Positions 26,418-52,395 of a stretch of 64,000 nucleotides of DNA are shown one piece after another (position 1 is the stretch's first letter; the number at the start of each line of letters is the position of its first letter). Under the pieces are notes generated by a model. That model searched no databases, was not told the origin of the DNA, and saw only the letters and a program-made list of their open reading frames with translations. The position numbers and the translations under genes were made by a program. The DNA is taken from positions 1 to 64,000 of the IMG/VR virus record IMGVR_UViG_3300007513_000004; one strand, written 5' to 3'.

Positions 26418-26446
26418 TTCATTTTTAATTTTGCATCGACTACTTC
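26418..26446 (+). promoter_or_regulatory. CATC-type promoter (paralogue 1)
   Basis: TTCATT-TTTAATTTTGCATCGAC-TACTTC. Confidence 0.75.
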
Positions 26447-26499
26447 ATTTCGTAGGGCACAATGTCCTGCACCAACCAATGAGAAAAGGAAAAGATAAA

Positions 26500-27003
26500 A
26501 TGAGCGACAAGACTGCAATTTTTGAGAATGATAACACTGAGTCTCCTCTCCAGGTGATTCGTCAGACTATGAGCGTTTCGCTGTCCGATGGCGGCGCGGC
26601 CCAGGTTTCTTTTGCCACTAATCGTGGTAAGGGTTCCGGTGCCCAGGTTCTTGCTGTCGATGACTTTGCCGAGGTTGTGAGTACTCTCCAGGGTTACTCT
26701 GATGCTGGTATCGAAGAGCGTGAGGAAGAGCAGCTTTCTCCTGCTGATACGATTCGTCGTACCATCCGTATTGAGGATGGTGTGGTCAGCTTCCGTACCC
26801 GTTCGGGTAAGGGCGCGAAGCCTGCTAAGATTCCTGCGAGTCAGTTCGCGGAAGTCTGCGAGCTTCTGTCTGGTACTCTGTCTGCGGTGGAGGCTGCTGG
26901 TCAGTCTCTTTCTCCGGCTGATGAGACTGCTGATGAAGCAGCCGAAGAGCCTGCTATGGACGGAGACTACTCCGACTATGAGGACATGGGTGACGACGAG
27001 TAA
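26500..27003 (+). CDS. tandem-repeat protein, paralogue 1 of 3
   Basis: two internal repeats (SFATNRGKGSG / SFRTRSGKGAK); AGGA SD. Confidence 0.85.
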   Translation: MSDKTAIFENDNTESPLQVIRQTMSVSLSDGGAAQVSFATNRGKGSGAQVLAVDDFAEVVSTLQGYSDAGIEEREEEQLSPADTIRRTIRIEDGVVSFRTRSGKGAKPAKIPASQFAEVCELLSGTLSAVEAAGQSLSPADETADEAAEEPAMDGDYSDYEDMGDDE

Positions 27004-27024
27004 TTAATACTCTGAAACGAAAAA

Positions 27025-27052
27025 GCCCACCCGGTTTAACTTCCGGGTGGGC
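27025..27052. terminator. intrinsic terminator between convergent genes
   Basis: 10-bp stem GCCCACCCGG/CCGGGTGGGC with an A-tract on the left. Confidence 0.8.
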
Positions 27053-27182
27053 ACTCGTTTAATCTATATGTCAAACTTTTGCACGAGGATATGTTGTGCC
27101 GTCGTCTGCCTTATTCCAATTACCGCCTTCTCTTCTGGCTAATTGTGCTGGAGTTAACCTGTGTTCAGGAATGTCTTTTTCT

Positions 27183-27452
27183 CTATCTGCCCAACTGCGA
27201 GAAGACCCCACCGGTTTGTCCCAATCGAGAAAAAGACATTCCATCACCGATAGGTCCTGGAGCAGTTTCTTCAACCTCGCCCTCAGCCCCTACAAGCCAA
27301 CCAGGACCTTCGGCCCCTTCTACTGGGTTTCCATCAATATCTAATGGAATTCCTCCAGCAAATTTAAAAATTACTTTATCAATAACATCAGCTTCTTTCA
27401 CAAGGCCTCTGCTATCTAGTTCGCTGGCTAATTTAATTAATTCTACAATCAT
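27183..27452 (-). CDS. shared-leader family protein (possibly frame-disrupted)
   Basis: MIVELIKLASELDSRGLVKEADVIDKVIFKFAG. Confidence 0.75.
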   Translation of the reverse strand: MIVELIKLASELDSRGLVKEADVIDKVIFKFAGGIPLDIDGNPVEGAEGPGWLVGAEGEVEETAPGPIGDGMSFSRLGQTGGVFSQLGR

Positions 27453-27571
27453 TATAGTCTCACGATATTAATTAAAATAATTAATAGAACTTTAAAGCTC
27501 TCGATAAAACTCTCTATAGAACAAAATTTCTTTGATTAATCTTTTAAAATTACTGGTAGAAATCTTTTTCA

Positions 27572-27754
27572 TCAATCGACTTCTTTACCAAGAGTTAACT
27601 TAACTAATTGAGCTGCATTTTGCTTCAAAGTTCTAAGACCCTTTCTGGCCCTGGTTCCTGCCGCAGCATTACCAGCAGCATTCTTTGAAACATCAGTTTC
27701 TAAACTTGCAACCAACTCTTTAATCTCTTCCCATTTACTTTCTACTGTAGCCAT
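27572..27754 (-). CDS. histone H1-like (Hc1 family) small basic protein
   Basis: GNAAAGTRARK motif; GGAGG SD. Confidence 0.75.
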   Translation of the reverse strand: MATVESKWEEIKELVASLETDVSKNAAGNAAAGTRARKGLRTLKQNAAQLVKLTLGKEVD

Positions 27755-27806
27755 AACTACCTCCTTTGTTTTTTATTATACTATTTGTCAAACTTTTGCC
27801 CAAGGG

Positions 27807-28241
27807 CTACCTGTGGCCCCAGTAAGATTGCGAAGCCTGATTTGGCTCAATAATCCTTACTGTAGTTTGATCATGCCAACATTGACATTCTTCATCATAC
27901 TCTGGGCCGGAGATTTTCTTAATCAAAATCCCATCATCCCTTACTCCTAAAGAGAAATAGTGAGTGGCATTAAACCCAACCTCAAACCATTCCACGGCAT
28001 CGCCACTGAAAGGATCTTTATAAGAATAAGGCCCTGTGGGATCGGAAGAGCAAGAGATAAGCCACTCCTTAATATTGTCGGGACAAAGATTTAGAGCCGC
28101 CTCGGTAGCCGCCCTTCTTTCTGCCCTATATTCCCGATCTCGCTGCTTTGCTGCAATCTCATCTCTGTCGAAATGCCAATCGGGAATCGATGCGAGATCA
28201 TCAATCATGGTTATCTTCCTGTTCTTCCGTAAAGGTTTCAA
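27807..28241 (-). CDS. hypothetical protein
   Basis: ORF ending immediately before a box; start uncertain. Confidence 0.65.
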   Translation of the reverse strand: MKPLRKNRKITMIDDLASIPDWHFDRDEIAAKQRDREYRAERRAATEAALNLCPDNIKEWLISCSSDPTGPYSYKDPFSGDAVEWFEVGFNATHYFSLGVRDDGILIKKISGPEYDEECQCWHDQTTVRIIEPNQASQSYWGHR

Positions 28242-28464
28242 TATTTTCTACAGTTGTGTAAAAGCCTTCCTCGTCATCAATCTGATAACTCATAGAAACA
28301 GCTTTAGATTGATTATGATATCTAACGGCATAATCAATATGCCCCCACTCTGGGAGGTTGGTTATAAAATTATGACCACTATAAAATCTTTCGCCCCAGG
28401 GGACGCCACCACGTTCAATTACAAACATTATTCCATAACCTCCGCGTCGTAAACTTTGATCCAT
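28201..28464 (-). CDS. hypothetical protein
   Basis: ORF; start uncertain. Confidence 0.55.
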   Translation of the reverse strand: MDQSLRRGGYGIMFVIERGGVPWGERFYSGHNFITNLPEWGHIDYAVRYHNQSKAVSMSYQIDDEEGFYTTVENIETFTEEQEDNHD

Positions 28465-28682
28465 TGTTTTTGCTTTTGCGAAAAAGCAAGCGATTGACGA
28501 GAAATATGATTAATTAATTCTTCCCGCTTTTGTGCCTGCGAGCGTCGGATAGGCTCTTCCATCATTAATTCAAAACGAGCCTTGGCTACGCCATAATCCT
28601 TTCCGCTTGACCACCCCATAATATTTCCTGCCAAGTATGCCAAAATTCCAACACAACTAATGACAATTATTTCTGCAATCAT
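28428..28682 (-). CDS. small membrane-anchored protein
   Basis: N-terminal TM; GGAGG SD. Confidence 0.65.
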   Translation of the reverse strand: MIAEIIVISCVGILAYLAGNIMGWSSGKDYGVAKARFELMMEEPIRRSQAQKREELINHISRQSLAFSQKQKQWIKVYDAEVME

Positions 28683-28855
28683 TATTCGGCCCTCCGATAA
28701 TTATTAAAACAATATCCTGCCAAAACTGTGCATAACAATGCAAAGCCCCAGCTGTGGGCAGTAAACGCTTGCCATGCAAATACAGTATTTAGAATTGCGC
28801 AAAACAAGCTGACTCTTCGAGAACTTAAAAAATCCATAGTATTCTCCTATATGTA

Positions 28856-28932
28856 TGGCACGCCCGATAGGATTCGAACCTATGACCCTCGGCTTAGAAG
28901 GCCGATGCTCTATCCAACTGAGCTACGGGCGC
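28856..28932 (-). tRNA. tRNA-Arg(TCT)
   Basis: cloverleaf, loop CT-TCT-AA, CCA end. Confidence 0.96.
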
Positions 28933-28936
28933 TCAA

Positions 28937-29125
28937 TTAAAATTGATGCTCGCCTTCATCTGAATCAACAATCACTCCGCCGTCTCTTAAGGCGATGATT
29001 AAAGTAAGCATAGTATTTTCAATAAAGGTAAGTCTTTCATCAAACGAAGTAACCTGTTCAACCATTAATCTGCATTGGTTCGTAAGCCTCTGCACTTGCT
29101 CTTCCCATAAATCTCTAGTATCCAT
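28937..29125 (-). CDS. small coiled-coil hypothetical protein
   Basis: ORF. Confidence 0.65.
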   Translation of the reverse strand: MDTRDLWEEQVQRLTNQCRLMVEQVTSFDERLTFIENTMLTLIIALRDGGVIVDSDEGEHQF

Positions 29126-29349
29126 TATTCTGACTCTATATCTTTTGGTGCTGTTAACATTATAACACCTAGAAAGTCTAAAATGTCATCCAGCATGGCT
29201 ATTTTTTCTTTCACGCCTTCTTGGTCGCTAGAAAATTCTAAGTCTCTTATAAAAGATAGCAACGCATTATATTGCGCTTCAACTTCTGCGGAATCTTTGA
29301 AAACCTTAATTTGGCTCTTCAACGACTCTATCGTCAGAACTATCTCCAT
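29125..29349 (-). CDS. hypothetical protein
   Basis: ORF, TAATG coupling. Confidence 0.65.
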   Translation of the reverse strand: MEIVLTIESLKSQIKVFKDSAEVEAQYNALLSFIRDLEFSSDQEGVKEKIAMLDDILDFLGVIMLTAPKDIESE

Positions 29350-29857
29350 TACCCTCTTCTTTTATAATTTTCTGAAGTTGACCCATCAGAGCTTCTCCCC
29401 AAGCATCTTCTGTTTCTTGGGACGCCTGATAGTCTTCACTATAATACTCATCTTCTGTAATATAACCTGCATGACGTATAACTTCTCCATCCGGAGGTGA
29501 TAAATAGGTATCACAATCCATGTGCAAGTGCGCGGTCCAACGGTCCTTGGGCAGCGTCATACTCCCAGAGAGGGGAACCAACTCTCGGCATCCTTCCTCT
29601 TTTACAAAGAAGAATTCATCTTCTTGCAAGCCAACACTATCTGCGCCATGCAAGTCCTTGTGCCAACTCGGCTCATAATAAACCTGATGAATCTTGCCGG
29701 GAAAAGCCGTAGGTCCATCATAAAAATATGATGCAACAGTTGGCATAGCCTCCCACCACTCTTTCAGTTCTTCGGCAGACATTTCGGGAATCCAAACCCA
29801 ATGTCTATATCCGTATTCTTCTTCAAGAAGGACGACAATTTCTTCGGCCAAGCTCAT
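29306..29857 (-). CDS. hypothetical acidic protein
   Basis: ORF with GAGGTG SD. Confidence 0.75.
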   Translation of the reverse strand: MSLAEEIVVLLEEEYGYRHWVWIPEMSAEELKEWWEAMPTVASYFYDGPTAFPGKIHQVYYEPSWHKDLHGADSVGLQEDEFFFVKEEGCRELVPLSGSMTLPKDRWTAHLHMDCDTYLSPPDGEVIRHAGYITEDEYYSEDYQASQETEDAWGEALMGQLQKIIKEEGNGDSSDDRVVEEPN

Positions 29858-29874
29858 TCCACACCTCAGTTTTG

Positions 29875-30078
29875 TTACTTGATAACTGATGATAAAACAG
29901 TATTAATTTTTTCTTGAAGATCATAGTTAAGTTTGATCTCAAGAATATTATTAATTTTCTTGCCTGCCTTTTCCAGCAAGCCCTTGGGTGTCTGCACACC
30001 CGCGCATGTGTTACAAGGGTCAACCTCGCCACATAACTCACAGGCTCCTTGGCCTGGATATACCGTTGTTCTATTCAT
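29875..30078 (-). CDS. small Cys-containing protein
   Basis: CELCG...CNTC; AGGAGG SD. Confidence 0.65.
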   Translation of the reverse strand: MNRTTVYPGQGACELCGEVDPCNTCAGVQTPKGLLEKAGKKINNILEIKLNYDLQEKINTVLSSVIK

Positions 30079-30259
30079 TGTCCTTCCTATTAACTATCAA
30101 TTCTAATGCGTGCGCGCACGGGTTCTCTGTCATCATCCTGCACGGTACTCGTTATCCTTTCCATGCTATTGGCAATAGAAAAGAGGGGAAAACTTAAAGC
30201 CATTACCCCAAGGCAGGCTACTATATAAAAAAGAAACTCCATGTAAAACTCCATAATGT

Positions 30260-31387
30260 TTATTCATAATCCCTGACGGCAATTCCGACAGGGAATCTTG
30301 GACGACCATCGTCCGTTAACTCTTGATACCTGACTGTCAAGTATTTTCCAATATAATCATCTAAATTTTTATAGATTACTGCGCGTTCTTCATGACTTCC
30401 GCGTGGACGCACACTAAACTCAAGTCCATCGGAAGTGGTACAGCGATATACGACAAGACCAGCTTCCCGACCGGAACCGTCCTCTCCACCAATAATCTTA
30501 AACTCATCATCAACAAATCTCTTTACCTTTTGCAAATCATATGAACGATGCTTGTACTTGTACGCACTCGCTTGGTTGCGCACCATCATGCCCTCATAGC
30601 CTTGCTGAACAAACATGCTTTCATACATATCAAACTCTGCTTGGTCAACAACATCATATGTTGATATGATTTTAATATTCTTTCCAATGATGGTCCACCC
30701 CTGACAATAATGTGGAAACATTGTTGAGCCAACTCCTTTTTGCGGCAACCTACACTCAAATGCGAGAGAAGGGTGTGGGGAATCATAGATATGATATTCA
30801 AGCAAATCTGTATCATCCCTCTTCTTCTTGACGGCAGCAATGATTCTTTGGAACGTCCACCCATGCACGTACAACTCTCCATCCGTGCATTGCCCGTTCG
30901 CGAGCATGGCACAAAGCTGTGCATTAATCTTATCGGGGATATCAATAACCTTTCCCTTGCGCGACCACATAGTTACAACACCATCGTCTTTGCGTGCGAG
31001 CATACGCACTCCATCCAGCTTAGGCTGAACAAGACAGGGAAAGTTAATCTTCGCGCTATGCTTGTCATACCTGTGCGCGAGCATAGGTAGGAACAATCCT
31101 TCTGACGTAGTAGGAATCTTATCCTTATCCTCTACATATCCTGAATCCTTTTTACGGCTATGTGCAGATTGAGCTTCAGAACATGCCTGTTCGTAGACAG
31201 AGGTTTCGTTTGCTCTACCGAGATTCTTGCCCTCTCCAACATAGCGTTGGTCAAGTTGTTTCTTGCCGTCCTCATAGCCATGTTCAGTTTCGATGTAACA
31301 GGAGCCGTCACCCATCTTGAGAACCGAGATATTCCACTCTTTAATCTTTCCATTGGTGGACTTTCCATATAGTGTAGGTAGATTCAT
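30260..31387 (-). CDS. ATP-dependent DNA ligase with N-terminal WGR-like domain
   Basis: motif I QPKLDGVR, DGELY, GYEGMMVR, LQKVK, OB-fold YLTVRYQELT..G.PRFPV. Confidence 0.93.
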   Translation of the reverse strand: MNLPTLYGKSTNGKIKEWNISVLKMGDGSCYIETEHGYEDGKKQLDQRYVGEGKNLGRANETSVYEQACSEAQSAHSRKKDSGYVEDKDKIPTTSEGLFLPMLAHRYDKHSAKINFPCLVQPKLDGVRMLARKDDGVVTMWSRKGKVIDIPDKINAQLCAMLANGQCTDGELYVHGWTFQRIIAAVKKKRDDTDLLEYHIYDSPHPSLAFECRLPQKGVGSTMFPHYCQGWTIIGKNIKIISTYDVVDQAEFDMYESMFVQQGYEGMMVRNQASAYKYKHRSYDLQKVKRFVDDEFKIIGGEDGSGREAGLVVYRCTTSDGLEFSVRPRGSHEERAVIYKNLDDYIGKYLTVRYQELTDDGRPRFPVGIAVRDYE

Positions 31388-31396
31388 AATATTTCC

Positions 31397-31687
31397 TTAC
31401 AAGCATCCGTCTTTGCGGGCTGTTTCGTATAGATAGTTTGCCGAGGTTGCAAGAAAATCCTCTTGCTTGTGCCACCTATCTCGTTCTCTTTCCCAAACAG
31501 GTTGGGAAACCTTGCCTTGTTTGTAATCTTGAACAGTCAAGCTAAAATCTTTGCCGGAGACATCTCTGAGATTTTGAACATTCAGAATATCCTCAAGTAC
31601 GGGCGTGCATCTTGCCTCAAACTGTTCTTGAGTTTCCTGACTGGAGCATCCCAAGCAAAGAAATAACAATGGTATATATTTTAACAT
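31397..31687 (-). CDS. putative lipoprotein
   Basis: lipobox-like LCLGC after a hydrophobic signal. Confidence 0.65.
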   Translation of the reverse strand: MLKYIPLLFLCLGCSSQETQEQFEARCTPVLEDILNVQNLRDVSGKDFSLTVQDYKQGKVSQPVWERERDRWHKQEDFLATSANYLYETARKDGCL

Positions 31688-31902
31688 TATGCTTCCGCCA
31701 TGTCTGCAAAGGATAACGCAACTTCGCTCATGTATACGTCCGTACCTTCTTTGGAGATTTGAACAAGAGGCTCTCCATCAACCATCCTGATATCAACAAA
31801 GCCCTTTTTATATAAACTCAATAGAGTTTTATCAAAGGCCACCTCGTCTGATGGGCCACTTTTAATCTTGTTTTCCATATATTCAATAACATCCTTACTC
31901 AT
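31687..31902 (-). CDS. hypothetical protein
   Basis: ORF coupled on both sides. Confidence 0.65.
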   Translation of the reverse strand: MSKDVIEYMENKIKSGPSDEVAFDKTLLSLYKKGFVDIRMVDGEPLVQISKEGTDVYMSEVALSFADMAEA

Positions 31903-32482
31903 CTTCATCCTCCTCATAGTATTCTTCTGTGTTTTCAAAAGTTAGGCAACCCTCTTCCCAAACAGCTTCTCCCCGAAAGCCCATACCCGGTTCATCATAT
32001 TGCAAATGAAAGGCAAGGCTGGGCCAATCTTCTGCCACCTTCTCAAAAAACTCCATAGGCGGCCCCCATGCTGTAGTAAAACTATACTGCAAATCGTTAT
32101 CTTCGGAAACATCTAAAGAACTATCGCAGCCTCCCCATTTACAACCCCAATGTGTTCCTTCCCATTTGTATCCACCATACGGGCGAATCTGACCAACAAG
32201 CTCTCCAAGTTCAACAGCTCTTGTGTCATCATAAGGAAAGCATCTAAAGTCTTCCGGCACAGGGTAAAGAGCGTGAAACGAAAGGTCCACAGTGTCTCCC
32301 GGCTCTGGAGGAGAAGATACCATAGACTGCAACCTAATATCATCATGCAAAGGCCAGCTCTCACCACTATGAGGAGAAAAGCTATTGTACGACTGTGTTG
32401 GTCCCCGCGCTTTTACGCGAAACCTTTTGATATCCTTCTCTGGACCTGTAATATACAATGAGTTCATACACCAATTAGGCAT
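31895..32482 (-). CDS. DUF1281/YubB ferredoxin-like family protein
   Basis: MPNWCMN...WGCKWG...FTTAWGPP...YDEPG. Confidence 0.8.
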   Translation of the reverse strand: MPNWCMNSLYITGPEKDIKRFRVKARGPTQSYNSFSPHSGESWPLHDDIRLQSMVSSPPEPGDTVDLSFHALYPVPEDFRCFPYDDTRAVELGELVGQIRPYGGYKWEGTHWGCKWGGCDSSLDVSEDNDLQYSFTTAWGPPMEFFEKVAEDWPSLAFHLQYDEPGMGFRGEAVWEEGCLTFENTEEYYEEDEDE

Positions 32483-32665
32483 TTTATTCCTCGTCTGTTA
32501 GGTTGTTTCCAATCTCTTTAGCTTTACTTACAGTTGCTTCAATGCCTGCATCCACCGAGGCCTTTACGCTTGCAAGGCTTTTCGGATTATTTGTTGCCCA
32601 ATAAAGCAATCCATATACCCCAATACATACTAATGCGATTCTAAATAATTGTTTCATAAGCTCTC

Positions 32666-33061
32666 CTATTCAAGTTCTTGAAGTTTCTCCTCAAACAATG
32701 CACAGTGGCTATCGCATGGTCCAAGCTGCACACCTTCTTTGCACGCATACGTGGACCCCTCAAGCTCTTCTCCCATGATAAACGCACCATGCTCGCAGTC
32801 CATACAAATTTGTGAAGAAGGCCAAGTATTTATTGTAACAGAATCTCCATCATCCCAAATGTCATCTTGGGCAAAAACATTACAACTTTCGTGCTTATCT
32901 CTCAATTCTTGTATTAGTTCAAGCCTTCTTCTTAGCGCATCGTAATGATTGCTTGTGGGAGCAAGCCCTTCCTCAACATCCTTTAGCAAGGCTGAGACAT
33001 GATGAGACAACATCGTGTATTGCCATTCAAGGTCTAATTTATAAATATCTTTCATTACCAC
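32666..33061 (-). CDS. hypothetical protein
   Basis: ORF. Confidence 0.7.
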   Translation of the reverse strand: MVMKDIYKLDLEWQYTMLSHHVSALLKDVEEGLAPTSNHYDALRRRLELIQELRDKHESCNVFAQDDIWDDGDSVTINTWPSSQICMDCEHGAFIMGEELEGSTYACKEGVQLGPCDSHCALFEEKLQELE

Positions 33062-33505: not shown

Positions 33506-33506
33506 C

Positions 33507-45992: not shown

Positions 45993-46101
45993 TCTGCCTC
46001 CTGTTATATGGTAACCGATGGATAAATAGAAATCAAAAAGAAATGTAAAAGTTTTGCCCGGGCTTATTTCAAATCTGTTTGAGCATCGGTTACTTTACGA
46101 T

Positions 46102-46395
46102 ATGGAAAAGAACATTCAGACTTTGGTGGAGTTGTGGCGGGATGCCGAGGCCAGGAAGTTGGAGGCCGACCGTAACGAGTTTGGTGCCAAGATGGAGGTT
46201 CGACGGGCTTTGTCCAAGTCTCTTGGAAGCTACACTGAACCGGGAACCAGTGGCGTTGGAATCTGCGCTGCGGCCATCGATATTGGTCATTGGGCCTGTG
46301 AAACGAGCCCTGTCGCGGTCTGCGTCTATGATGATTGGTCCGACCCGATTCATGACAACTGCCTTTACTGCAACAACCCAGAGGAACGAAAATGA
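46102..46395 (+). CDS. hypothetical protein with C-terminal Cys/His motif (probably leaderless mRNA)
   Basis: promoter 46068-46096, ATG 5 nt after the -10; C..SP..VCVYD..DP.HD.CL.C..PEERK. Confidence 0.7.
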   Translation: MEKNIQTLVELWRDAEARKLEADRNEFGAKMEVRRALSKSLGSYTEPGTSGVGICAAAIDIGHWACETSPVAVCVYDDWSDPIHDNCLYCNNPEERK

Positions 46396-46679
46396 CTTGG
46401 AAAGCCTTTCTTAAATCAAAACTGCGCGAGCGGTCCATCAGTAATCAGACAGTATATATTTCTGTCTTTGTAGCATTCTTCGCCGGGTGGGTCGTGGGAT
46501 AGGCATTTTAATGCCAATAATAAAAACTAAATTATTTACGTCCCCGCCAGCCAATCGTGGGACTGCTCCTTCCAAATTACGAACGCGAATTATAAAATCC
46601 TTTAGCGCAAACCGCCGGGCAAAAAGTTGACATTTATAATAAAAAGAGGCTGCCGAGGCAGCCTCGATATTTAGGCAAT

Positions 46680-47129
46680 TTAGCAACCGTATCGGCGCTC
46701 CATCGCAACCTCCGCTTCGTATTCGGCCTCCCACCGTGCTCGTTCTTCCAAGTCCTGTAGAACCTTCCGATTATTATCGGAGAGCCTATCCTCGTCAACG
46801 ACTGGCGAAACTCGCTTGCCGCCACATTCGTAGCAGGTCACGTCATAGCTTCCAGAAAAATAGTCCCGCTCGAAATCCGGGTCATCATAGAAGTCATCGG
46901 AGGTCAATCCGTTGCAATCGATGGAAGGATTGACGTGGGAGCCTCGACCGGAGCAGGTGGCGCACACCTCAAACTTTACGGGCAGCAGCTCAAAGAATTC
47001 CTCGCCATCCTCATCCTCAATGGCGACTTGAACCATCATCTGGCTCTCGTCAAAGGAATTATACCAAGTGCCACGGCGGGCCGCTCGGGTGCGGGGGTCG
47101 TTGTAATAGTTGTAATCATCGATGGACAT
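46680..47129 (-). CDS. phage protein with DnaJ-like CxxCxGxG motifs
   Basis: CATCSGRG, CYECGG; promoter 47152-47180. Confidence 0.8.
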   Translation of the reverse strand: MSIDDYNYYNDPRTRAARRGTWYNSFDESQMMVQVAIEDEDGEEFFELLPVKFEVCATCSGRGSHVNPSIDCNGLTSDDFYDDPDFERDYFSGSYDVTCYECGGKRVSPVVDEDRLSDNNRKVLQDLEERARWEAEYEAEVAMERRYGC

Positions 47130-47222
47130 TAGACACTCCTCTGTGTATGGATGAGTAAACGATGGAAAAACAAAGTTGAAATAAGCATGTGCAAATCTTT
47201 TGCCCAGAGTAATATTTATCTT

Positions 47223-47363
47223 ATGAAGTGGTTAGATGACATAAAACAGAAACTATGGTGGAGAGGAATTACTGGCAAGGATCTTGCAGTACTTACGCTC
47301 ATGCCCGTATCTTTCGTAGCAATTATATTGTTTTTAATTTGGGGGCTGGCGCAAGGTATGTAA
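47223..47363 (+). CDS. small membrane protein
   Basis: TM ORF between two boxes. Confidence 0.5.
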   Translation: MKWLDDIKQKLWWRGITGKDLAVLTLMPVSFVAIILFLIWGLAQGM

Positions 47364-47378
47364 ATATTTTGCCCGGCG

Positions 47379-47582
47379 TTATAATAAATAAACAAGGCTG
47401 GCGACTAAAACAACACCAGCAGAGAATATTGCCATTGGAACATAGGCTCCAGCGGTGAACGAAAGTGTTGCGCCCGCAGCAGATATCATAAAGGCAAAGT
47501 ACATAACTATAGCTATCAACTCCCCAATATGTTCTGGAACGCCCATTGCCCAGCTTCTATATTTTGCAATTAAGTTATTCAT
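47379..47582 (-). CDS. small two-TM membrane protein
   Basis: hydrophobic ORF between boxes. Confidence 0.65.
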   Translation of the reverse strand: MNNLIAKYRSWAMGVPEHIGELIAIVMYFAFMISAAGATLSFTAGAYVPMAIFSAGVVLVASLVYLL

Positions 47583-47641
47583 TTAACGATGATACTCCGG
47601 GCAAAAAATTGACACAAAGGTTGAACCAAAAGGCTCTCAGT

Positions 47642-47857
47642 CTAAAAGTCATCCCGAGAAACCTTCTTGCGGCAAGCCTTCTTGCTCTGCTCCTTACGAG
47701 CATCACCGTGAGAGCCGGAACCGTTCCGAAGAATCAGTCCAAGCATATCAAGGTTGCGAGTCTTACGTCGCTTACCCTCTCCGCGCATGGTGGCGCGAAG
47801 TTCCCGCTCCTCACGGCGGGCATTACGCTTGCGGTTCTTTCGTGCTGTCTTGGCCAT
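47642..47857 (-). CDS. small Arg/Lys-rich protein
   Basis: GGAGG SD; promoter 47877-47905. Confidence 0.75.
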   Translation of the reverse strand: MAKTARKNRKRNARREERELRATMRGEGKRRKTRNLDMLGLILRNGSGSHGDARKEQSKKACRKKVSRDDF

Positions 47858-47933
47858 GATAGCCTCCTTCTGTCTCTATGTAACCGATGGAGAAATAGAA
47901 ATCAAAAATGTGTTGTAAAACTTTTGCCCAGGC

Positions 47934-48368
47934 TCACCGTCTAATTTTTACATTAGGTATGTCAGCAATCCGGTCAGCCAGTAAATCTCGACCATCAGGA
48001 CAAGAGCGATTCAACATAGTCAGTATAGACTGAATCTCAACCCAAAGCTGTTCTGGGAGCACAAGACAGGAGTATCCAAGATAAACCTTGACCCAATCCT
48101 CTCCCAAGCTACGAAAGGCGCAATCGGATGCAGCGTAAAGATGCTCCGGCTTTACCGAGAAGATTGCGCCCTTTACTGTAAATTCGATGGGTTCCGTATC
48201 AGTAAAGGCAAAGCCACCAGGGTCGAGGTGGGCAACATCAATAGCGGTTTTTTCCTCTGGAGTAACACTATATCGTTCAGCTATGTCATCCTCACACACG
48301 CTCGTACCAACGAGTGAAATGTGCAAACGAATTTTGGAATCTGCGGGGTAACGGATTGACTCAAGCAT
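47934..48368 (-). CDS. hypothetical protein
   Basis: GGAGG SD; promoter 48384-48412. Confidence 0.75.
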   Translation of the reverse strand: MLESIRYPADSKIRLHISLVGTSVCEDDIAERYSVTPEEKTAIDVAHLDPGGFAFTDTEPIEFTVKGAIFSVKPEHLYAASDCAFRSLGEDWVKVYLGYSCLVLPEQLWVEIQSILTMLNRSCPDGRDLLADRIADIPNVKIRR

Positions 48369-48515
48369 ACTTCCTCCTGTGTGTATGTATGTGATGATAA
48401 AATAATACTGGAAAAGTCTGGGGAAAAGATTGACATACGTGTGAATGTTTTGCCCAAATGGGAGTGGGCCCGGTGGAATTACCCCAATTCCACCGGGCGG
48501 CGTGTGCCCATCACC

Positions 48516-48986
48516 TCACACGCCCTCTCGCTCCCAAGGGGGACGCGGGTTACCATTTCTCCAATCATGCTCCCAACGCTCACGCATGTTAGAGATACCC
48601 GTAGCATCAACCCCGTGCTGATTGCGAGTTGCCAACTCCTCATCTGTGCAGCCTCCATCATAAAGAGAGACTACCGAAACCTCGTATCCATGTTCCTCTG
48701 CCATACGCAAGTACGGCTCCATTTCCCATCGCTGGGTAAAAGTATTGTGAACCACCACGGTCGCTGCCAGTCGATTCCTCATGGAATTTTCGGCCTGCTC
48801 CTGACACCAAAAGTGTGCAGCGGGCAGCTTTCGAGGGTTAAAATTGTAAATTCCATCCTCATCAAGAAAGAAATCATCAGCGGCAAAGAAGCACTTGCCA
48901 AGCGGTGCGCCTACGTTCAGTAGCATCCGACCAAGCCTTGTCTTTCCTGAACCGGAAATTCCGCGAACCAAAATAAGTCTATACAT
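48516..48986 (-). CDS. P-loop kinase/NTPase (AAA_33, N4BP2-like)
   Basis: LVRGISGSGKT, AADDFF, AHFWCQ, VVHNTFT..WE..PY. Confidence 0.88.
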   Translation of the reverse strand: MYRLILVRGISGSGKTRLGRMLLNVGAPLGKCFFAADDFFLDEDGIYNFNPRKLPAAHFWCQEQAENSMRNRLAATVVVHNTFTQRWEMEPYLRMAEEHGYEVSVVSLYDGGCTDEELATRNQHGVDATGISNMRERWEHDWRNGNPRPPWEREGV

Positions 48987-49067
48987 GCGTGTCCTCGTTG
49001 GGCAAAAAATTGTCATACTTCTCCCTTGGAGGCCCCCGGCACAATGCCGGGGAACCTCGGGAGGCGG

Positions 49068-49511
49068 CTACTTCTTGACGGCTGCTCCATCAAACTTGAC
49101 GTAGCCTTTGGTAGCAATCCGGGGAAGGTTATCGACAATCTCCGAATCAAACATATCGAGCATCGTCCGATACTTGACCTGCTCATCGGCGGTCAACGAG
49201 CTAACCCGCTTCTCCATCGCAGCTTTGGTCAGACCGGAAAGCCGATTCCAAAGTTCGATAATGTGGTCCGGCGCATACTCTCGCGTGCATCCAAGCTCTT
49301 GAAGGAGCATACAGATAGTCGGAACCGACCGTGCGCGGTTTGTGCCTGCGCGTGTACTGGATGGTCCTCGGGAGAGGACACCTTCCACCTCGGCGGTGAA
49401 CTTGACATGCACATCCGACTCGGGTACAAGCACGGATTCGTCGTTGCAGGATTGAAGGTTGATAACTTTGGCGAGGGCCAACTGTTCGATGGGCGAAAGG
49501 GTCTGGGACAT
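49068..49511 (-). CDS. hypothetical protein
   Basis: AGGAG SD; promoter 49559-49587. Confidence 0.75.
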   Translation of the reverse strand: MSQTLSPIEQLALAKVINLQSCNDESVLVPESDVHVKFTAEVEGVLSRGPSSTRAGTNRARSVPTICMLLQELGCTREYAPDHIIELWNRLSGLTKAAMEKRVSSLTADEQVKYRTMLDMFDSEIVDNLPRIATKGYVKFDGAAVKK

Positions 49512-49640
49512 TGATTGTCTCTCCTAAAGAGGGTGGGTTTGTCTCCCTCTTACATCATAATGTAGCCGATGATAAAACAGAATCGAAAAATGAAATGTTA
49601 AAGTTTTGCCCAGCGGTCTGCAATAATCATGCCAAAAAGT

Positions 49641-49674
49641 TGGCACAGTTCTTGCATTAGCAAGAAGCATGCCA
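49641..49674. promoter_or_regulatory. head-to-head pair of sigma54 consensus sites
   Basis: TGGCAC-AGTTC-TTGCA (+), TGGCAT-GCTTC-TTGCT (-). Confidence 0.7.
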
Positions 49675-49752
49675 GTTAATTAAGTTAAAGTTTTGCCCGA
49701 TTAAATAAATAATTAACTTAATCTGGGCAAAAAGTTGACATTTAAAACAAAT

Positions 49753-50021
49753 AAAAAGAAGGGGGGCAAAGGCCCCTCTGGGTAGCGCGGCTTGTGTGCA
49801 AAACAGCAGCAGGGGAGCTTGCTCTTTGAGAGGTGTGTGGTTCGCGACCCGAACAAATCTCGTGACATCCCTTGGCTTTTCAGTTTGCCTTGCCTTCCCA
49901 GAGGGGCATAGCTGCTCATTACTTTACCGGGGGTCTATCCTGTACCCCGAACAGTTACACGGTATGAGTCAACCGTGCGGTGTATAACTAGTATTCCACC
50001 GTTTCTGAATCTCTCTCCTTG
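49753..50021 (-). ncRNA. candidate 270-nt structured RNA
   Basis: promoter 50028-50056, multiple stems, terminal hairpin plus U-tract, no credible ORF. Confidence 0.55.
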
Positions 50022-50093
50022 TGTTCTAAAGTAATTGATGCAAAAATCGAAATGAAAAACATATTTGCAAAGTTTTTGCCCATACGTAAGGCT

Positions 50094-50127
50094 TGGCACA
50101 CTTTTTGCTAATGCAAGAAACATGCCA
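50094..50127. promoter_or_regulatory. head-to-head pair of sigma54 consensus sites
   Basis: TGGCAC-ACTTT-TTGCT (+), TGGCAT-GTTTC-TTGCA (-). Confidence 0.7.
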
Positions 50128-50181
50128 ACAAACATGTCAATGTTTTGCCCTTGGGCAAAAGTTTGACACAAAGCATAAAAG

Positions 50182-50205
50182 AAGGCCGGGCATATGCCCG
50201 GCCTT
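50182..50205 (-). terminator. intrinsic terminator of ardC
   Basis: AAGGCCGGGC stem followed by CTTTT on the minus strand. Confidence 0.75.
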
Positions 50206-50234
50206 GCGTATGGCCCCACTCGGGGCGTCTGGCC

Positions 50235-51176
50235 CTACTTGCGCTGGCCCTCCCCCTTGTCGATGAGGTAGCGCATGACCTTGCCCGCTTCATTCGCGGC
50301 CCGCTGAATCACGGTAGGGTCATCCTTGAGAGCCTTCCGCCAGTTGGCAAGGTAGGCCACATGGTTGTCCATCAAACCCTCTCGCTTGACTCCCAGATAG
50401 GCGCATGTGAACGCCGCGCCAATCTCGGCAACCAACTCCTCGTAAGCATACGCCTCCGAGCCGAAGCCCGTGAACTTGACGATGCCATCCCGGTTGAGTC
50501 GGTCCTTTGCACCTGACCAGTGGGCGTGCTCATGGATGGTAGTGGCCCAAAAATCAGCAACAGTGGTGAAGGCTCCGGCCTCGGGCACCATGATGTAGTC
50601 CTCGCGAGGGGAGTAGAAAGCACGCCCGCCGCCCGTGCGGAAATCCGCGTCGATACCTTTGACAAGTGCAGCCGCCGCCTCATGGCCCACCTTTGGGTCA
50701 ACCTCTGAAATCTCGGCAGACGGTAGGGGGTTCGTCGTTTGCTGGTTGTTGAAAGTGTACGAGCTTCCAAATCCGATGAACTTTGTGGACCCCTTGACCA
50801 AGAGACTCGCGCCACAGGGCTTGCACTTTTTTGCAAATCCACATGGGCGGCCACAACTGTTGCAGGCCAGCTTCGGGAAGAAAATAGGAGTCCCCTTCTC
50901 GCCTTTGCGCACGTAGTTGCCGCTCTTTTGCCACTGGCCAAACCCGGCCCAACGGTTGTCACCAAACTGAACCCCGGCCATCATCAGCATAAAGCCATTG
51001 AAGTTTCCGCCGTAGGCGCGGCCCGTCAGGATGTTGATTGGCATCCCACCAGCAAGGGACCTATCCCACGGCATAATCCAAGGGGTGCCGTCCTCGGGCG
51101 GGTTGTCGAGGGCTTCGATAATCTGCGCGGCTATACGCTCGCACGTCTCTTGAATCTTGTCGTTGGGCTTGCTCAT
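50235..51176 (-). CDS. ardC: ArdC-family antirestriction / ssDNA-binding protein with an inserted Zn-ribbon
   Basis: WIMPW, N..TGR.Y.G.N, VRKGEKG, RAFYSP..D.I, HEHAHW, YAYEELVAEIGAAF; promoter 51225-51253. Confidence 0.9.
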   Translation of the reverse strand: MSKPNDKIQETCERIAAQIIEALDNPPEDGTPWIMPWDRSLAGGMPINILTGRAYGGNFNGFMLMMAGVQFGDNRWAGFGQWQKSGNYVRKGEKGTPIFFPKLACNSCGRPCGFAKKCKPCGASLLVKGSTKFIGFGSSYTFNNQQTTNPLPSAEISEVDPKVGHEAAAALVKGIDADFRTGGGRAFYSPREDYIMVPEAGAFTTVADFWATTIHEHAHWSGAKDRLNRDGIVKFTGFGSEAYAYEELVAEIGAAFTCAYLGVKREGLMDNHVAYLANWRKALKDDPTVIQRAANEAGKVMRYLIDKGEGQRK

Positions 51177-51432
51177 GGTGGTCCTCCGGGGACTAAAGCG
51201 GGTATTGACGGGGGCTTACATACATGAGTAACCGATGCTCAAATAGAAATGAAAAAACCAATTGCCAATCTTTTGCCCAGACAGGTGTGCTTCTTTATGC
51301 AAAAACCATGCCAACCCAATTGACAAAGTTTTGCCCAGACTCAGACGCATTTCCTTGCAAGAACCATGCCAATGTGTATGAAAATGTTTTGCCCAAATGT
51401 AAAAACATATTTTACAAAACCTCGACAGAGGT

Positions 51433-51466
51433 TGGCATGGTTCTTGCTAATGCAAGAACTGTGCCA
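51433..51466. promoter_or_regulatory. head-to-head pair of sigma54 consensus sites
   Basis: TGGCAT-GGTTC-TTGCT (+), TGGCAC-AGTTC-TTGCA (-). Confidence 0.7.
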
Positions 51467-51567
51467 TATGTTATGCAAATGTTTTGCCCAATGCTTTGGG
51501 CAAAAAAATGACATGTGTACGAAAATACACACGTCTTTACATTTTCTTTACATCGGACAAAAGAAAA

Positions 51568-51595
51568 CCCCTCACCGCCTTTCGGCGGTGAGGGG
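51568..51595 (-). terminator. intrinsic terminator
   Basis: 12-bp stem CCCCTCACCGCC-GAAA-GGCGGTGAGGGG plus TTTTCTTTT. Confidence 0.88.
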
Positions 51596-51623
51596 GTAGG
51601 AGGTTAGCCCCGCCCCGGCCCTA

Positions 51624-52322
51624 CTATGCGTAGGGGATGGGGAGGGGGGAGGAGGCGTCAAACTCGACCCAATCGGCGTCCAGCCACATGTCGGCGGGGA
51701 CGTGCCGCCACTCGATGCGAACTCGGCGGTAGCGGCCAGCGTAGGCACCGGAGCCGAAGGGACGGAGCCAGCACACGGGCTTGCCTTTCGGGGTGGTCAG
51801 GTCCTGACCCTCGGCCCAGACCTTGCTGGCATCGGCGCGGCGCATCATCAGCACCCCGTCAATCTCGGTCAGGAGGCAGACGTAAACCGGGACACCAGCA
51901 TCGACGGCGGCAAGGAAGGCGGCCAGCGGGGTTCCGGCCTTGGCACAGTCGGCCTCAGCATCCCAGACGCCGCTGGTCAGGTCGCGATTCCCGTAGGGGT
52001 CGCCGGTGCTTCCCTTGAAGTTGACCGGGACCATTTCGACAATCGCCGGGTAGGGGTGGCCCGCGAGCGACGGGTGAACCACGGGCCACACGTCATCAAA
52101 GAGGCCCAGACCCCGGCCACGCTGCAAGGGGCGGCCCAATCGGTCCAGGTCGCCATTCTGCGCGACACCATCCCGGCACGGAGGGACCGCGACACCAGCC
52201 GCTTCCATCCAATATGCGACGTGCTTGTACCCGTCGCCCACTCCGGCACCCATTCCGCCCGCTTCCGCGAGGCGGCAGCCGCCCTCAATCTCAAGTCCGT
52301 TTCTGTCGTTCTTCTTAGTCAT
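51624..52322 (-). CDS. hypothetical protein, very GC-rich
   Basis: GGAGG SD; promoter 52339-52367; terminator downstream. Confidence 0.8.
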   Translation of the reverse strand: MTKKNDRNGLEIEGGCRLAEAGGMGAGVGDGYKHVAYWMEAAGVAVPPCRDGVAQNGDLDRLGRPLQRGRGLGLFDDVWPVVHPSLAGHPYPAIVEMVPVNFKGSTGDPYGNRDLTSGVWDAEADCAKAGTPLAAFLAAVDAGVPVYVCLLTEIDGVLMMRRADASKVWAEGQDLTTPKGKPVCWLRPFGSGAYAGRYRRVRIEWRHVPADMWLDADWVEFDASSPLPIPYA

Positions 52323-52395
52323 AGTGACCTCCTACACATAGGTAAGTGATGCTCAAACAGAAATGAAAAACTATTGCCCAAACAAAACGAAAGGT

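What the first reader, a model, noticed from the sequence alone, without database searches (positions are those of the whole stretch)
26418..52367. Stereotyped promoter with an invariant spacer CATC, 25 copies on both strands
Seen: TT(C/G)ATT - exactly 17 nt, consensus TYTRTTTTAKCATCRRY - TACWTW. Plus-strand -35 starts: 26418, 34413, 35661, 38517, 44050, 44635, 46068. Minus-strand -10 left ends: 37511, 38385, 38452, 40714, 41727, 42636, 43362, 43989, 46008, 47152, 47877, 48384, 49559, 50028, 51225, 52339, plus two outside the block (14194, 18500). The spacer is better conserved than the -35. Known: sigma70 spacers are normally unconstrained apart from extended -10 TG. Inference: a new spacer element read by an unusual host sigma, the phage sigma or an activator.
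Basis: partly seen in the sequence, partly recalled or inferred. Interest (0 to 1): 0.7.

Follow-up and report, generated by a model that had tools for sequence, protein, structure and literature searches.

The report
Repeated promoter cassettes of a marine jumbo phage
About 28 near-identical promoter cassettes, each carrying an invariant CATC between its two promoter boxes, drive the small genes and RNAs of a shuffled region in an uncultured marine jumbo phage; related phages each carry their own version, so this is a lineage-specific promoter dialect, not a general new signal.

Summary
All 25 listed sites exist and I add three. In the 223-kb contig the motif occurs almost only at 26-52 kb, and chance expects about 0.1-0.2 matches. 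Sites face co-oriented genes: 19 of 28 have a Shine-Dalgarno sequence and start codon 15-56 nt downstream. Others precede tRNAs or non-coding RNAs.

The motif is the core of a larger cassette. A 16-bp box, GGGCAAAAnnTTnACA, lies 7-9 bp upstream in either orientation. Then come TTsAww, 17 bp, TAYnT, a likely start, and the ribosome site. The region is a mosaic of orphan genes whose order is shuffled between relatives, like the PeSL cassettes of T4-type phages.

CATC is kept in sister lineages: 243 distinct sites in 50 contigs, and 80 of 96 orthologous promoters found with CATC masked. More distant relatives have other private spacers. Position -7 carries no information, so the -10 resembles alpha-proteobacterial housekeeping or RpoH promoters, not TATAAT.

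No phage RNA polymerase was detected. An RpoH-like phage sigma is conserved in the clade. No transcript data were usable.

The parts
14194..14222 (-). Outlying weak variant promoter (TTTAAT-17-TATAAA, spacer ..TTTTTGCATCGCT)
   Evidence: Matrix score 14.5; hexamers.
18500..18528 (-). Outlying variant promoter (TTAAAT-17-TATGAA); ORF 18242-18463 starts 36 nt downstream
   Evidence: Matrix score 19.1.
26418..26446 (+). CATC promoter before paralogue-family gene 26500-27003
29879..29907 (-). New weak variant (ATTAAT-17-TATCAA) before ORF 29306-29857
   Evidence: Matrix score 17.5; start codon 21 nt downstream.
34332..34360 (-). Hybrid site: sigma54-like TGGCACGGTTTTTGCA whose GCATC falls on the CATC position, followed by TAC; before ORF 34025-34285
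34413..34441 (+). CATC promoter, divergent partner of 34332-34360, sharing box 34388-34403; before paralogue 34530-34934
35661..35689 (+). CATC promoter (-10 TATTTT) with no ORF; the unit ends at terminator 35842-35867
37511..37539 (-). CATC promoter (-10 TATGTT) driving the ~650-nt structured RNA
38385..38413 (-). CATC promoter (-10 TATATC) before paralogue 37888-38328
38452..38480 (-). CATC promoter in tandem upstream of 38385-38413
38517..38545 (+). CATC promoter, divergent partner sharing box 38492-38507; before ORF 38568-38810
38874..38902 (+).
   Evidence: Matrix score 36.6; start codon 17 nt downstream.
40714..40742 (-). CATC promoter before ORFs 40549-40689 and 40197-40634
41727..41755 (-). 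CATC promoter before the SprT-like gene 41133-41708
42636..42664 (-). CATC promoter followed by about 200 nt without an ORF, then ORF 42033-42404
43362..43390 (-). CATC promoter before ORF 42982-43341
43989..44017 (-). CATC promoter before ORF 43647-43967
   Evidence: One RNA-library contig lies inside the gene.
44050..44078 (+). CATC promoter, divergent partner sharing box 44025-44040; before ORF 44189-44446, tRNA-Lys and tRNA-Leu
44635..44663 (+). CATC promoter just after tRNA-Leu; the unit ends at terminator 44994-45010
46008..46036 (-). CATC promoter before the metallophosphoesterase gene 45303-45992
46068..46096 (+). CATC promoter, divergent partner sharing box 46044-46059; before ORF 46142-46414
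47152..47180 (-). CATC promoter before ORF 46680-47129
47877..47905 (-). CATC promoter before ORF 47642-47857
48384..48412 (-). CATC promoter before ORF 47934-48368
49559..49587 (-). CATC promoter before ORF 49068-49511
50028..50056 (-). CATC promoter with no clear ORF; the unit ends at terminator 49763-49776
51225..51253 (-). CATC promoter before the ArdC-N/metallopeptidase gene 50235-51176; last of a tandem array after three box plus sigma54-like units
52339..52367 (-). CATC promoter before ORF 51624-52322; first cassette of the block
25854..52379 (.). 31 copies of the 16-bp upstream box GGGCAAWANNTTNNCA. Left ends: 25854, 26199, 27786, 34388, 35042, 35627, 35879, 37568, 38492, 40750, 41838, 44025, 45029, 46044, 46617, 47190, 47359, 47599, 47914, 48440, 49000, 49596, 49725, 50066, 50135, 50153, 51263, 51321, 51379, 51474, 52364
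   Evidence: 31 found against 0.03 expected. Only one further, chance-like hit in the remaining 170 kb. The box lies 6-11 bp (mostly 7-9) from the -35 in either orientation. Six copies sit just after intrinsic terminators. It is conserved in all related phages.
26400..52400 (.). Hyperplastic block of small, mostly orphan genes, two tRNAs and non-coding RNAs. G+C is 42-55%, against 34-44% (mostly below 41%) in the rest of the window
   Evidence: Mosaic, reordered synteny with relatives.

Best explanation
The sites are core promoters of a repeated regulatory cassette. The cassette punctuates a hyperplastic, early-type region of an uncultured marine jumbo phage. A full cassette reads: sometimes the terminator of the preceding unit; a 16-bp box GGGCAAAAnnTTnACA; 7-9 bp; an A/T-rich stretch; TTsAww; 17 bp; TAYnT; about 5 nt; a conserved pyrimidine-purine step that is the probable start; a short leader; a Shine-Dalgarno sequence; and the start codon, or instead a tRNA or non-coding RNA. 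Shown: the sites, their orientation and spacing to genes, the cassette anatomy, the mosaic shuffling between relatives, and conservation of CATC in sister lineages. Inferred: host core RNA polymerase with a sigma70-family factor reads the sites. I consider the host's primary sigma the most likely reader, making this an early class. The -10 (G-Y-T-A-Y-A-T with an uninformative -7) matches the alpha-rhizobial housekeeping consensus CTTGAC-N17-CTATAT rather than TATAAT. In this view CATC, with the following R-G-Y, is an upstream extension of the -10 region at -19 to -13. That is where sigma region 3 and the beta-prime zipper can touch DNA. It is functionally constrained in this lineage group. The near-identity of the rest of the spacer within one genome mostly reflects concerted evolution: the repeated cassettes recombine with each other, as PeSL cassettes do in T4-type phages.
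For: Statistics and confinement to the block. Co-oriented start codons with a Shine-Dalgarno sequence lie 15-56 nt downstream at 19 of 28 sites; the rest precede tRNAs, structured RNA or short terminated units. Pooled logo of 243 distinct sites from 50 contigs: T-34, A-32, T-29, TTT at -25..-23, R-15, G-14, Y-13, T-8 in 71%, -7 flat (A55 C67 G52 T69), and Y-2/R-1 conserved. With the CATC columns masked, orthologous upstream regions in relatives that still score as this promoter type carry CATC in 80 of 96 cases; the other 16 differ at one or two positions, most by a single substitution. Across seven distinct orthologous sequences of the ncRNA promoter, CATC, TAT and TTTT never vary, while the -35 and -10 positions 4-6 drift. 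Relatives share the architecture but have private spacers. Gene order in the block is scrambled between relatives, and strain-level deletions end at cassettes. No T7-like or multisubunit polymerase gene was found in this contig or in five relatives, one of them 94% complete. Sigma54-type promoters, which need the host's sigma54, sit in tandem with CATC promoters behind the same box. The sigma gene itself lies behind canonical promoters: TTGACA-16-TATATT here and TTGCCA-18-TATAAT in G003. Literature: PeSL cassettes (PMC4122927); S. meliloti consensus (PMC2873474).
Against: There are no transcript 5' ends, so promoter activity, start site and timing are all inferred. The host is unknown. The alpha-proteobacterial reading of the -10 rests on consensus similarity only. 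The best cellular homologue of the phage sigma is only 33% identical. The third position of the -35 is not a conserved G (G 35%, C 30%), which is unusual for primary sigma and for RpoH alike. A host factor does not obviously explain why each phage lineage keeps a different, internally invariant spacer. That pattern is also what co-evolution with a phage-encoded reader predicts. The phage carries more canonical TATAAT-type promoters elsewhere, so this class may belong to a different holoenzyme.
Confidence: 0.45

Rival explanations
1. The cassettes are a phage-specific promoter class read by host core polymerase carrying the phage's own RpoH-like sigma (window 3893-4750, minus strand). CATC-RGY-TAYnT is then a long extended -10 for that sigma, and the spacer dialects co-evolve with it.
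For: The sigma is RpoH-like over its full length (178 bits against TIGR02392, below the cutoff). It has an RpoH-box-like DRAIFSNLS segment (the resemblance to the RpoH box is judged from memory). It is conserved in G001, G003 and G005 at 58, 51 and 44% identity and in more than 130 metagenomic clusters. RpoH promoters have TTG, then C-14 T-13 A-12, an uninformative -10 and T-9 (PMC3441632). This is the same core as Y-T-A-Y-n-T here, with no T at the sigma70 -7 position. The sigma gene sits behind canonical promoters, which fits a cascade. Private, contiguous promoter dialects per lineage are what a co-evolving phage reader predicts.
Against: The sigma's region 2.4 and 4.2 helices are nearly invariant among the four orthologues although the spacers differ. 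The block looks like an early region: orphan genes, ArdC-like and SprT-like genes, tRNAs. The class is nearly absent from replication and structural regions, where a phage sigma would be expected to act. There is no C-rich extended -10 as in known RpoH promoters, and the G of TTG is not conserved.
Confidence: 0.3
2. CATC and its neighbours form the binding site of a regulator, either a repressor that shuts the class off or an activator, which sits in the spacer of an otherwise ordinary promoter.
For: Positions just beside CATC (-20, and the -15/-13 degeneracy) vary while CATC does not, as expected for base-specific contacts. Orthologous conservation exceeds that of the hexamers.
Against: The spacer has no dyad symmetry. 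No helix-turn-helix or other DNA-binding domain was found among 20 block proteins. Each lineage would need its own regulator specificity.
Confidence: 0.1
3. The cassettes are promoters for an unrecognised phage-encoded, possibly virion-delivered, RNA polymerase, analogous to the T7 group or N4. TATA/TACA would lie next to the start.
For: Conservation is contiguous over 30-45 bp and each lineage has a private version. One dialect (CCACTATATC in G002) resembles T7/SP6 CACTATAG (T7/SP6 sequence from memory). Giant ORFs of 1540-3323 aa match no polymerase or other informative family.
Against: No polymerase family was detected in six records. The -35-like TTsA at exactly 17 bp and the Y/R step 10-11 nt after TA fit sigma geometry. 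Two sigma genes imply dependence on host core polymerase.
Confidence: 0.08

Closest known systems
PeSL (promoter-early stem-loop) cassettes of T4-type phages (Arbiol 2010, PMC2839356; Comeau 2014, PMC4122927)
   Same: Both are repeated composite motifs made of a terminator stem-loop, a sigma70-like promoter, a Shine-Dalgarno sequence and a start codon. Both concentrate in hyperplastic regions full of orphan genes. Both differ in sequence between phage lineages and are associated with insertion, deletion and reordering of gene modules.
   Different: PeSL promoters are described as two hexamers with an N17 spacer and a T at the end of the -10 (TATAAT, TAYWAT). Here the spacer is conserved and -7 is uninformative. 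A separate 16-bp box is conserved across the whole clade, and sigma54-type promoters use the same box. These phages are not T4-like: several large proteins have no PHROG match.
RpoH (sigma32) family promoters, e.g. Rhodobacter sphaeroides RpoHI/RpoHII (PMC3441632)
   Same: The -10 core is T-A-(T)-n-T, with informative bases just upstream of it and none at the sigma70 -7 position. The -35 begins TT. An RpoH-like sigma is encoded by the phage.
   Different: There is no C-tract or C-14. The conserved upstream block is CATC, 4-7 nt before the TA. The G of TTG is not conserved. Dependence on the sigma is untested.
Alpha-rhizobial housekeeping promoter CTTGAC-N17-CTATAT (PMC2873474, citing MacLellan 2006)
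   Same: The sister phage's consensus TTTGAG-N17-TTATAT matches 9 of 12 positions at the same spacing. In the E. coli register both read TATATn, without a T at -7.
   Different: The host is unknown. In G000 the -10 has C where the consensus has T (TACnT). The rhizobial consensus has no conserved spacer.
Known spacer-proximal promoter elements: extended -10 TGn, and the -18 / Z-element contacts of E. coli holoenzyme (cited from memory, not checked here)
   Same: All are sequence-specific information between the hexamers, close to the -10.
   Different: Sequence and position differ (CATC at -19..-16, RGY at -15..-13). No TG occurs at -15/-14.
T7-group phage promoters
   Same: Each phage lineage has its own contiguous, highly stereotyped promoter, present in many copies.
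   Different: No single-subunit polymerase gene was found, and the geometry is two-box.

Membership tests
Primary-sigma (sigma70, E. coli-type) promoter | -35 hexamer close to TTGACA, including the conserved G at position 3 | tested here: inconclusive
   TT and A are conserved (T-34 0.91 bit, A-32 0.80 bit). Position 3 is G 35%, C 30%.
Primary-sigma (sigma70, E. coli-type) promoter | Spacer of 17 +/- 1 bp between the hexamers | tested here: met
   Exactly 17 bp at all 28 sites and in the relatives' dialects.
Primary-sigma (sigma70, E. coli-type) promoter | -10 TATAAT with A at -11 and T at -7 | tested here: not met
   T-12 and A-11 are invariant, but -7 is flat (A55 C67 G52 T69 of 243). T is instead favoured at -8, in 71% of sites. 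In G000 the sixth position is T in 13 of 28 sites.
RpoH/sigma32-type promoter | TTG in the -35; -10 core A-T-n-T with informative bases immediately upstream (PMC3441632) | tested here: inconclusive
   The -10 core T-A-Y-n-T is present. TT is present but the G is not conserved. The upstream bases are G-Y rather than C-T, plus CATC.
RpoH/sigma32-type promoter | Transcription depends on an RpoH-family sigma | not testable with these tools
   An RpoH-like gene is present, but there is no expression or biochemical data.
PeSL-type mobile regulatory cassette | Composite of a stem-loop or terminator, promoter, Shine-Dalgarno sequence and start codon, repeated many times | tested here: met
   Promoter plus SD plus start at 19 of 28 sites. 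Six terminator-plus-box junctions were found. Not every cassette has a terminator.
PeSL-type mobile regulatory cassette | Located in hyperplastic regions of orphan genes, with module gain, loss and reordering between relatives | tested here: met
   Most block proteins have no Pfam family. Order and content are scrambled in L090, L091 and L126, and indels occur in L080 and L081. Strain-level joints end at cassettes.
PeSL-type mobile regulatory cassette | Found in T4-type myoviruses with canonical early promoters | tested here: not met
   This is a different phage group with a non-canonical -10. It works like a PeSL but is not a member by descent.
Sigma54 (-24/-12) promoter (considered for CATC because of TTGCATC hybrids) | GG at -24 and GC at -12, spaced as TGGCAC-N5-TTGCW | tested here: not met
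   The CATC class lacks the GG, and has G before CATC in only 20% of sites. Separate genuine sigma54-like sites do exist: 13 against 0.29 expected.
Single-subunit (T7-like) polymerase promoter | A cognate phage RNA polymerase gene | tested here: not met
   PF00940 was not found in G000 or in five relatives. The control genomes contain none, so sensitivity was not verified.

The most novel reading that the evidence does not exclude
A large clade of marine jumbo phages uses a sigma32-like phage factor that reads about 30 contiguous base pairs, including the spacer. Sigma and promoter dialect would drift together lineage by lineage, a sigma-factor counterpart of T7-type polymerase/promoter co-evolution. 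A clade-wide 16-bp box would recruit a still unknown factor that serves both this class and sigma54-type promoters, with no phage-encoded enhancer-binding protein.
Probability: 0.2. Interest if true: 0.75.

Novelty: new variant of a known kind. Interest (0 to 1): 0.55.

Why it matters
These phages are widespread in marine metagenomes. One search finds near-identical DNA in many runs, one search finds 284 relatives of one block gene, and one search finds more than 130 clusters of the sigma. They have no cultured member, so their regulatory logic is known only from sequence. The cassettes provide a ready map of transcription units for a region made almost entirely of unknown genes. They also point to a new large structured RNA, and they are a natural experiment in promoter evolution: one architecture with many private spacers. 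If CATC-RGY proves to be read by a sigma, it would extend the known reach of the -10 region. If it proves neutral but homogenised, it would be a clear case of concerted evolution of regulatory DNA in a virus.

Tried and rejected
1. Transcript evidence. The two run searches found only DNA holders, plus one RNA library holding a single 216-nt contig inside gene 43647-43967. Laying four runs gave no 5' ends, so there is no TSS information.
2. An exact-motif scan of IMG/VR (TCTGTTTTATCATCNNNTAC) returned 30 single, chance-like hits, none with the flanks.
3. Near-identity searches against cultured phages found nothing except a tRNA.
4. A first protein-anchored relative (L045/L046, 53% identity to the phosphoesterase) has neither the motif nor the box in 20 kb. 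It is too distant to help.
5. I considered the box's TTGACA-like half as a -35 paired with TATCAT, or with the TTSATT hexamer, as a -10. The spacings (20-25 bp) do not fit, so I rejected this by inspecting.
6. I considered E. coli-type sigma32 spacing (TTGAAA-N13-15-CCCCAT, recalled from memory) with CAT as the -10. The -35-like hexamer is only about 7-10 bp upstream, so I rejected it.
7. I considered a Bacteroidota-type promoter (TTTG / TAnnTTTG, recalled from memory). The bases after TAC are not conserved, and strong Shine-Dalgarno sequences argue against such a host.
8. I considered the TAC..GTA inverted repeats downstream as an N4-like hairpin. They occur at only about half the sites, with loops of 3-8 nt, and are absent in G001. 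A conserved TG/start region explains them better.
9. Host identification through the sigma gave only hits of 33% identity or less, scattered across phyla.
10. Rfam has no family for the 650-nt RNA.
11. Complex prediction and structure prediction were not used. They give no verdict for protein-DNA questions.

Full report
WHAT THE WINDOW IS. The window is the first 64 kb of a single 223,402-bp viral contig from IMG/VR, estimated at 67% complete. It carries a tmRNA and nine tRNAs. It encodes giant ORFs of up to 3323 aa with no informative family match, tail-fibre and endolysin genes and two sigma70-family genes. Near-identical DNA is held by many marine and seawater metagenome runs. No cultured phage matches it. 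It is an uncultured marine jumbo phage.

THE OBSERVATION. Seven of those hits carry CATC at the same place. TTTTNNCATCNNNTAC matches 16 times against 0.09 expected. A weight matrix run over the whole contig finds 24 strong sites (score 21.6-44), all between 26.4 and 52.4 kb. Four weaker variants lie at 14206, 18512, 29891 and 6827; the last was not pursued. The other 170 kb holds nothing comparable. I add 38874-38902(+), 29879-29907(-) and the hybrid 34332-34360(-).

The sites point at genes. At 19 of 28, a Shine-Dalgarno sequence and start codon of a co-oriented ORF follow within 15-56 nt of the -10. The remainder precede tRNAs, a second promoter in tandem, or short units without ORFs that end at intrinsic terminators.

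THE MOTIF IS PART OF A LARGER CASSETTE. A 16-bp box, GGGCAAAAnnTTnACA, occurs 31 times in the window against 0.03 expected. It has only one chance-like copy in the rest of the genome. It lies 6-11 bp (mostly 7-9) upstream of the -35, in forward orientation at 11 promoters and inverted at 6. Four divergent promoter pairs share a single central box. The box is an imperfect palindrome (GCAAAA-n-TTTTRC), which fits its working in either orientation. Six further copies lie just downstream of intrinsic terminator hairpins.

The same box also precedes a second promoter type by about 7 bp. These sites match the sigma54 consensus TGGCAY-N5-TTGCW, with 13 found against 0.29 expected. Four of them form pairs within long palindromes. 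The ArdC-like gene 50235-51176 is preceded by three box-plus-sigma54-like units and then one box-plus-CATC unit.

GENE CONTENT AND PLASTICITY. The block has a G+C of 42-55%, against 34-44% (mostly below 41%) elsewhere in the window. It encodes mostly proteins with no Pfam family. The exceptions are ArdC-N/metallopeptidase, SprT-like, metallophosphoesterase, AAA_33 and GP88-family proteins, and a three-copy paralogue family.

Compared with related contigs the block is a mosaic. L080 and L081 (94-99% identity) differ by insertions and deletions. In L090, L091 and L126 the same modules appear in a different order and orientation. In a related strain, deletions or replacements end at positions 44077, 45992 and 46069, which are at promoter cassettes. 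This behaviour is described for PeSL cassettes of T4-type phages. Those are composite terminator, sigma70-like promoter, SD and start motifs, concentrated in hyperplastic regions, differing between phage pairs and mediating modular shuffling (PMC4122927; PMC2839356).

COMPARATIVE EVIDENCE ON CATC. Using the paralogue family as a probe, I recovered 8 viral and 78 metagenomic loci; 284 relatives exist in all. The box is conserved in all lineages with recognisable cassettes. The core promoter is not. Each lineage has its own stereotyped version of the same architecture: a -35-like hexamer, 17 bp, then Y-TATA.
- G000-like contigs have TTTsAT, then TTctaTTTTA.CATC.., then yTACwT.
- The sister group G001 has 19 copies in 128 kb, and twelve metagenomic loci carry the same dialect. 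It has ttTGAr, then att.TTTTCT.CATC.G, then TTATAT.
- Other lineages have TATC.G, GATC.AGG, ATCTGcG, GATATaGG, AGTCGGG (G003), GATTCA (G005) or CCTCCA (G002) at the corresponding place.

CATC, or at least ATC-n-G, is therefore shared by several lineages whose remaining spacer differs, and it is replaced in more distant ones.

Two tests avoid circularity.
(i) Across seven distinct orthologous sequences of the promoter that drives the structured RNA, CATC, TAT and the T-run are invariant. The last three -35 positions and -10 positions 4-6 all vary.
(ii) I searched upstream regions of orthologous genes in relatives with the matrix after zeroing the CATC columns. Where this promoter type was still recognised (96 regions), the 4-mer at that place was CATC in 80. 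The other 16 were CAGC, CACC, TATC, CATT or TACT, most of them single substitutions.

WHAT KIND OF PROMOTER. The pooled logo uses 243 distinct sites from 50 contigs. It shows T-34 and A-32 but no conserved G between them. It shows T-29, TTT at -25..-23, R-15, G-14 and Y-13, then T-12, A-11, Y-10, A-9 (61%) and T-8 (71%). Position -7 carries no information. A conserved pyrimidine-purine step lies 10-11 nt after the TA and is the likely start.

An uninformative -7 is not what E. coli-type primary-sigma promoters show. It is what the alpha-rhizobial housekeeping consensus CTTGAC-N17-CTATAT shows when read in the E. coli register as TATATn (PMC2873474). It is also what RpoH-family promoters show: TTG, C-14, T-13, A-12, an uninformative -10 and T-9 in that paper's numbering (PMC3441632). 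The sister phage's TTTGAG-N17-TTATAT matches the rhizobial consensus at 9 of 12 positions.

WHO READS IT. No T7-like or multisubunit RNA polymerase, no sigma54 and no enhancer-binding protein were detected in this contig. Polymerases and enhancer-binding proteins were also sought without a significant match in five relatives, including the 94%-complete G005. The clade therefore appears to depend on host core polymerase.

It does encode an RpoH-like sigma at window 3893-4750(-), which scores 178 bits against TIGR02392, below the family cutoff. That gene is conserved in G001, G003 and G005 and in more than 130 metagenomic clusters that JGI labels sigma-32. Its region 2.4 and 4.2 helices are nearly invariant among four orthologues. 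It lies behind canonical-looking promoters: TTGACA-16-TATATT at about 5514 here and TTGCCA-18-TATAAT in G003. A second, ECF-like sigma lies at contig position 129733-130308.

Two readings remain.
- Host primary sigma reads the cassettes as an early class. In favour: the early-type gene content, tandem use with host-sigma54-type promoters, near-absence of the class from replication and structural regions, and the invariant recognition helices of the phage sigma despite differing spacers.
- The phage RpoH-like sigma reads them. In favour: the RpoH-like -10 core, the private per-lineage dialects, and a cascade in which the sigma gene has canonical promoters.

I rate these about 0.45 and 0.30. A spacer-binding regulator (about 0.1) and an unrecognised phage polymerase (about 0.08) are less likely. 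No RNA data could decide between them.

WHAT CATC IS, ON THIS EVIDENCE. It is a constrained block at -19 to -16, in numbering that sets the T of TAY at -12. It is contiguous with R-15, G-14, Y-13 and the -10. I read it as an upstream extension of the -10 region that matters for this promoter dialect. The invariance of the remaining spacer within one genome is best explained by concerted evolution of a repeated, recombining cassette. The constraint is real and exceeds that on the -35. However, it is confined to certain lineages, embedded in a longer module, and its reader is unknown.

SIDE FINDINGS.
(1) The promoter at 37511-37539(-) drives a conserved RNA of about 650 nt with no ORF (about 36840-37505, minus strand). 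Seven orthologues, 71-86% identical, support 173 base pairs. Of these, 61 show compensatory double changes and 96.9% of cells are paired. When partners are slid by 1-3 columns, only 5-16 pairs show compensatory changes and 39-45% of cells are paired. Rfam has no match.
(2) Sigma54-type promoters on a phage, widespread in part of the clade, with no phage-encoded activator detected.
(3) The clade-wide box.

Each of these may prove more novel than the CATC motif itself.

Noticed in passing
window 36840-37505 (minus strand): A conserved, highly structured RNA of about 650 nt with no ORF, transcribed from the CATC promoter at 37511-37539. Seven orthologues support 173 pairs, 61 of them with compensatory changes; 96.9% of cells are paired, against 39-45% in slid controls. 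There is no Rfam match. It is a candidate new large phage ncRNA.
   Followed up: partly
window 34343-34358(-), 41796-41829, 49619-49674, 50094-50127, 51298-51313(-), 51356-51371(-), 51433-51466, 52396-52411(+): Thirteen matches to the sigma54 -24/-12 consensus TGGCAY-N5-TTGCW, against 0.29 expected. Four are face-to-face pairs within 15-bp-stem palindromes. Most lie about 7 bp behind a copy of the box. They are also abundant in relatives G001 and G002. No sigma54 gene was found in this contig, and no significant enhancer-binding-protein gene in this contig or in five relatives.
   Followed up: partly
window 34332-34360(-); L047 near 11687(+) and 13096(+): Hybrid promoters. The GCATC (or GCACC) of a sigma54-like -12 element falls exactly on the CATC position and is followed three nt later by TAC or TAT. 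The two promoter classes therefore share the T-run and CAT segment.
   Followed up: no
window 3893-4750(-); contig 129733-130308(-): Two phage sigma genes. One is RpoH-like (285 aa) and lies behind a canonical TTGACA-16-TATATT promoter at about 5514. The other is ECF-like (191 aa) and lies in the late region, just downstream of an intergenic TTGGTATAAT motif.
   Followed up: partly
contig positions 83111, 130911, 161558, 190409 (all minus strand, outside the window): Four intergenic copies of TTGGTATAAT upstream of large minus-strand operons, including the 2738-aa ORF. This may be a separate middle or late promoter class.
   Followed up: no
window 35690-35870(+), 42430-42630(-), 49780-50020(-): Three further CATC promoters are followed by short units without convincing ORFs. 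Two of them end at intrinsic terminators. The 42.5-kb unit contains a GC-rich hairpin motif (GACCGCTGGCAGAGCGGGGGGA..) that recurs in relative L052. They may be small RNAs.
   Followed up: no
window 36031-36831: An 800-bp segment carrying a GP88-family ORF (36048-36728, minus strand). It is absent from the 95-99% identical contig L080 and sits immediately 3' of the large RNA. It looks like a recent insertion.
   Followed up: partly
window 26500-27003(+), 34530-34934(+), 37888-38328(-): Three paralogues (62-66% identical) of an unknown protein of about 135-167 aa, each behind its own CATC promoter. The family has 284 relatives in marine metagenomes and served as the probe for related phages.
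   Followed up: partly
window 1878-2227(-) and 10790-18203, 28856-28932, 44455-44629: A one-piece tmRNA (tag ANNNYYYEPVALAA) and nine tRNAs. Two of the tRNAs (Lys, Leu) lie inside the cassette block, downstream of promoter 44050-44078.
   Followed up: no
L050 2900-3300 and 6500-6750 (relative G002): Coding tandem repeats with a 69-nt period (25 copies of ..CACCGAGAAGATGGTCC..) in a relative's genes. They are unrelated to the promoters.
   Followed up: no
contig 161584-217592 (outside the window): Five ORFs of 1540-3323 aa. Four were searched and one (1778 aa) was not. The four gave no PHROG match and almost no Pfam match; the only domain is a Laminin_G_3 domain in the largest.
   Followed up: partly
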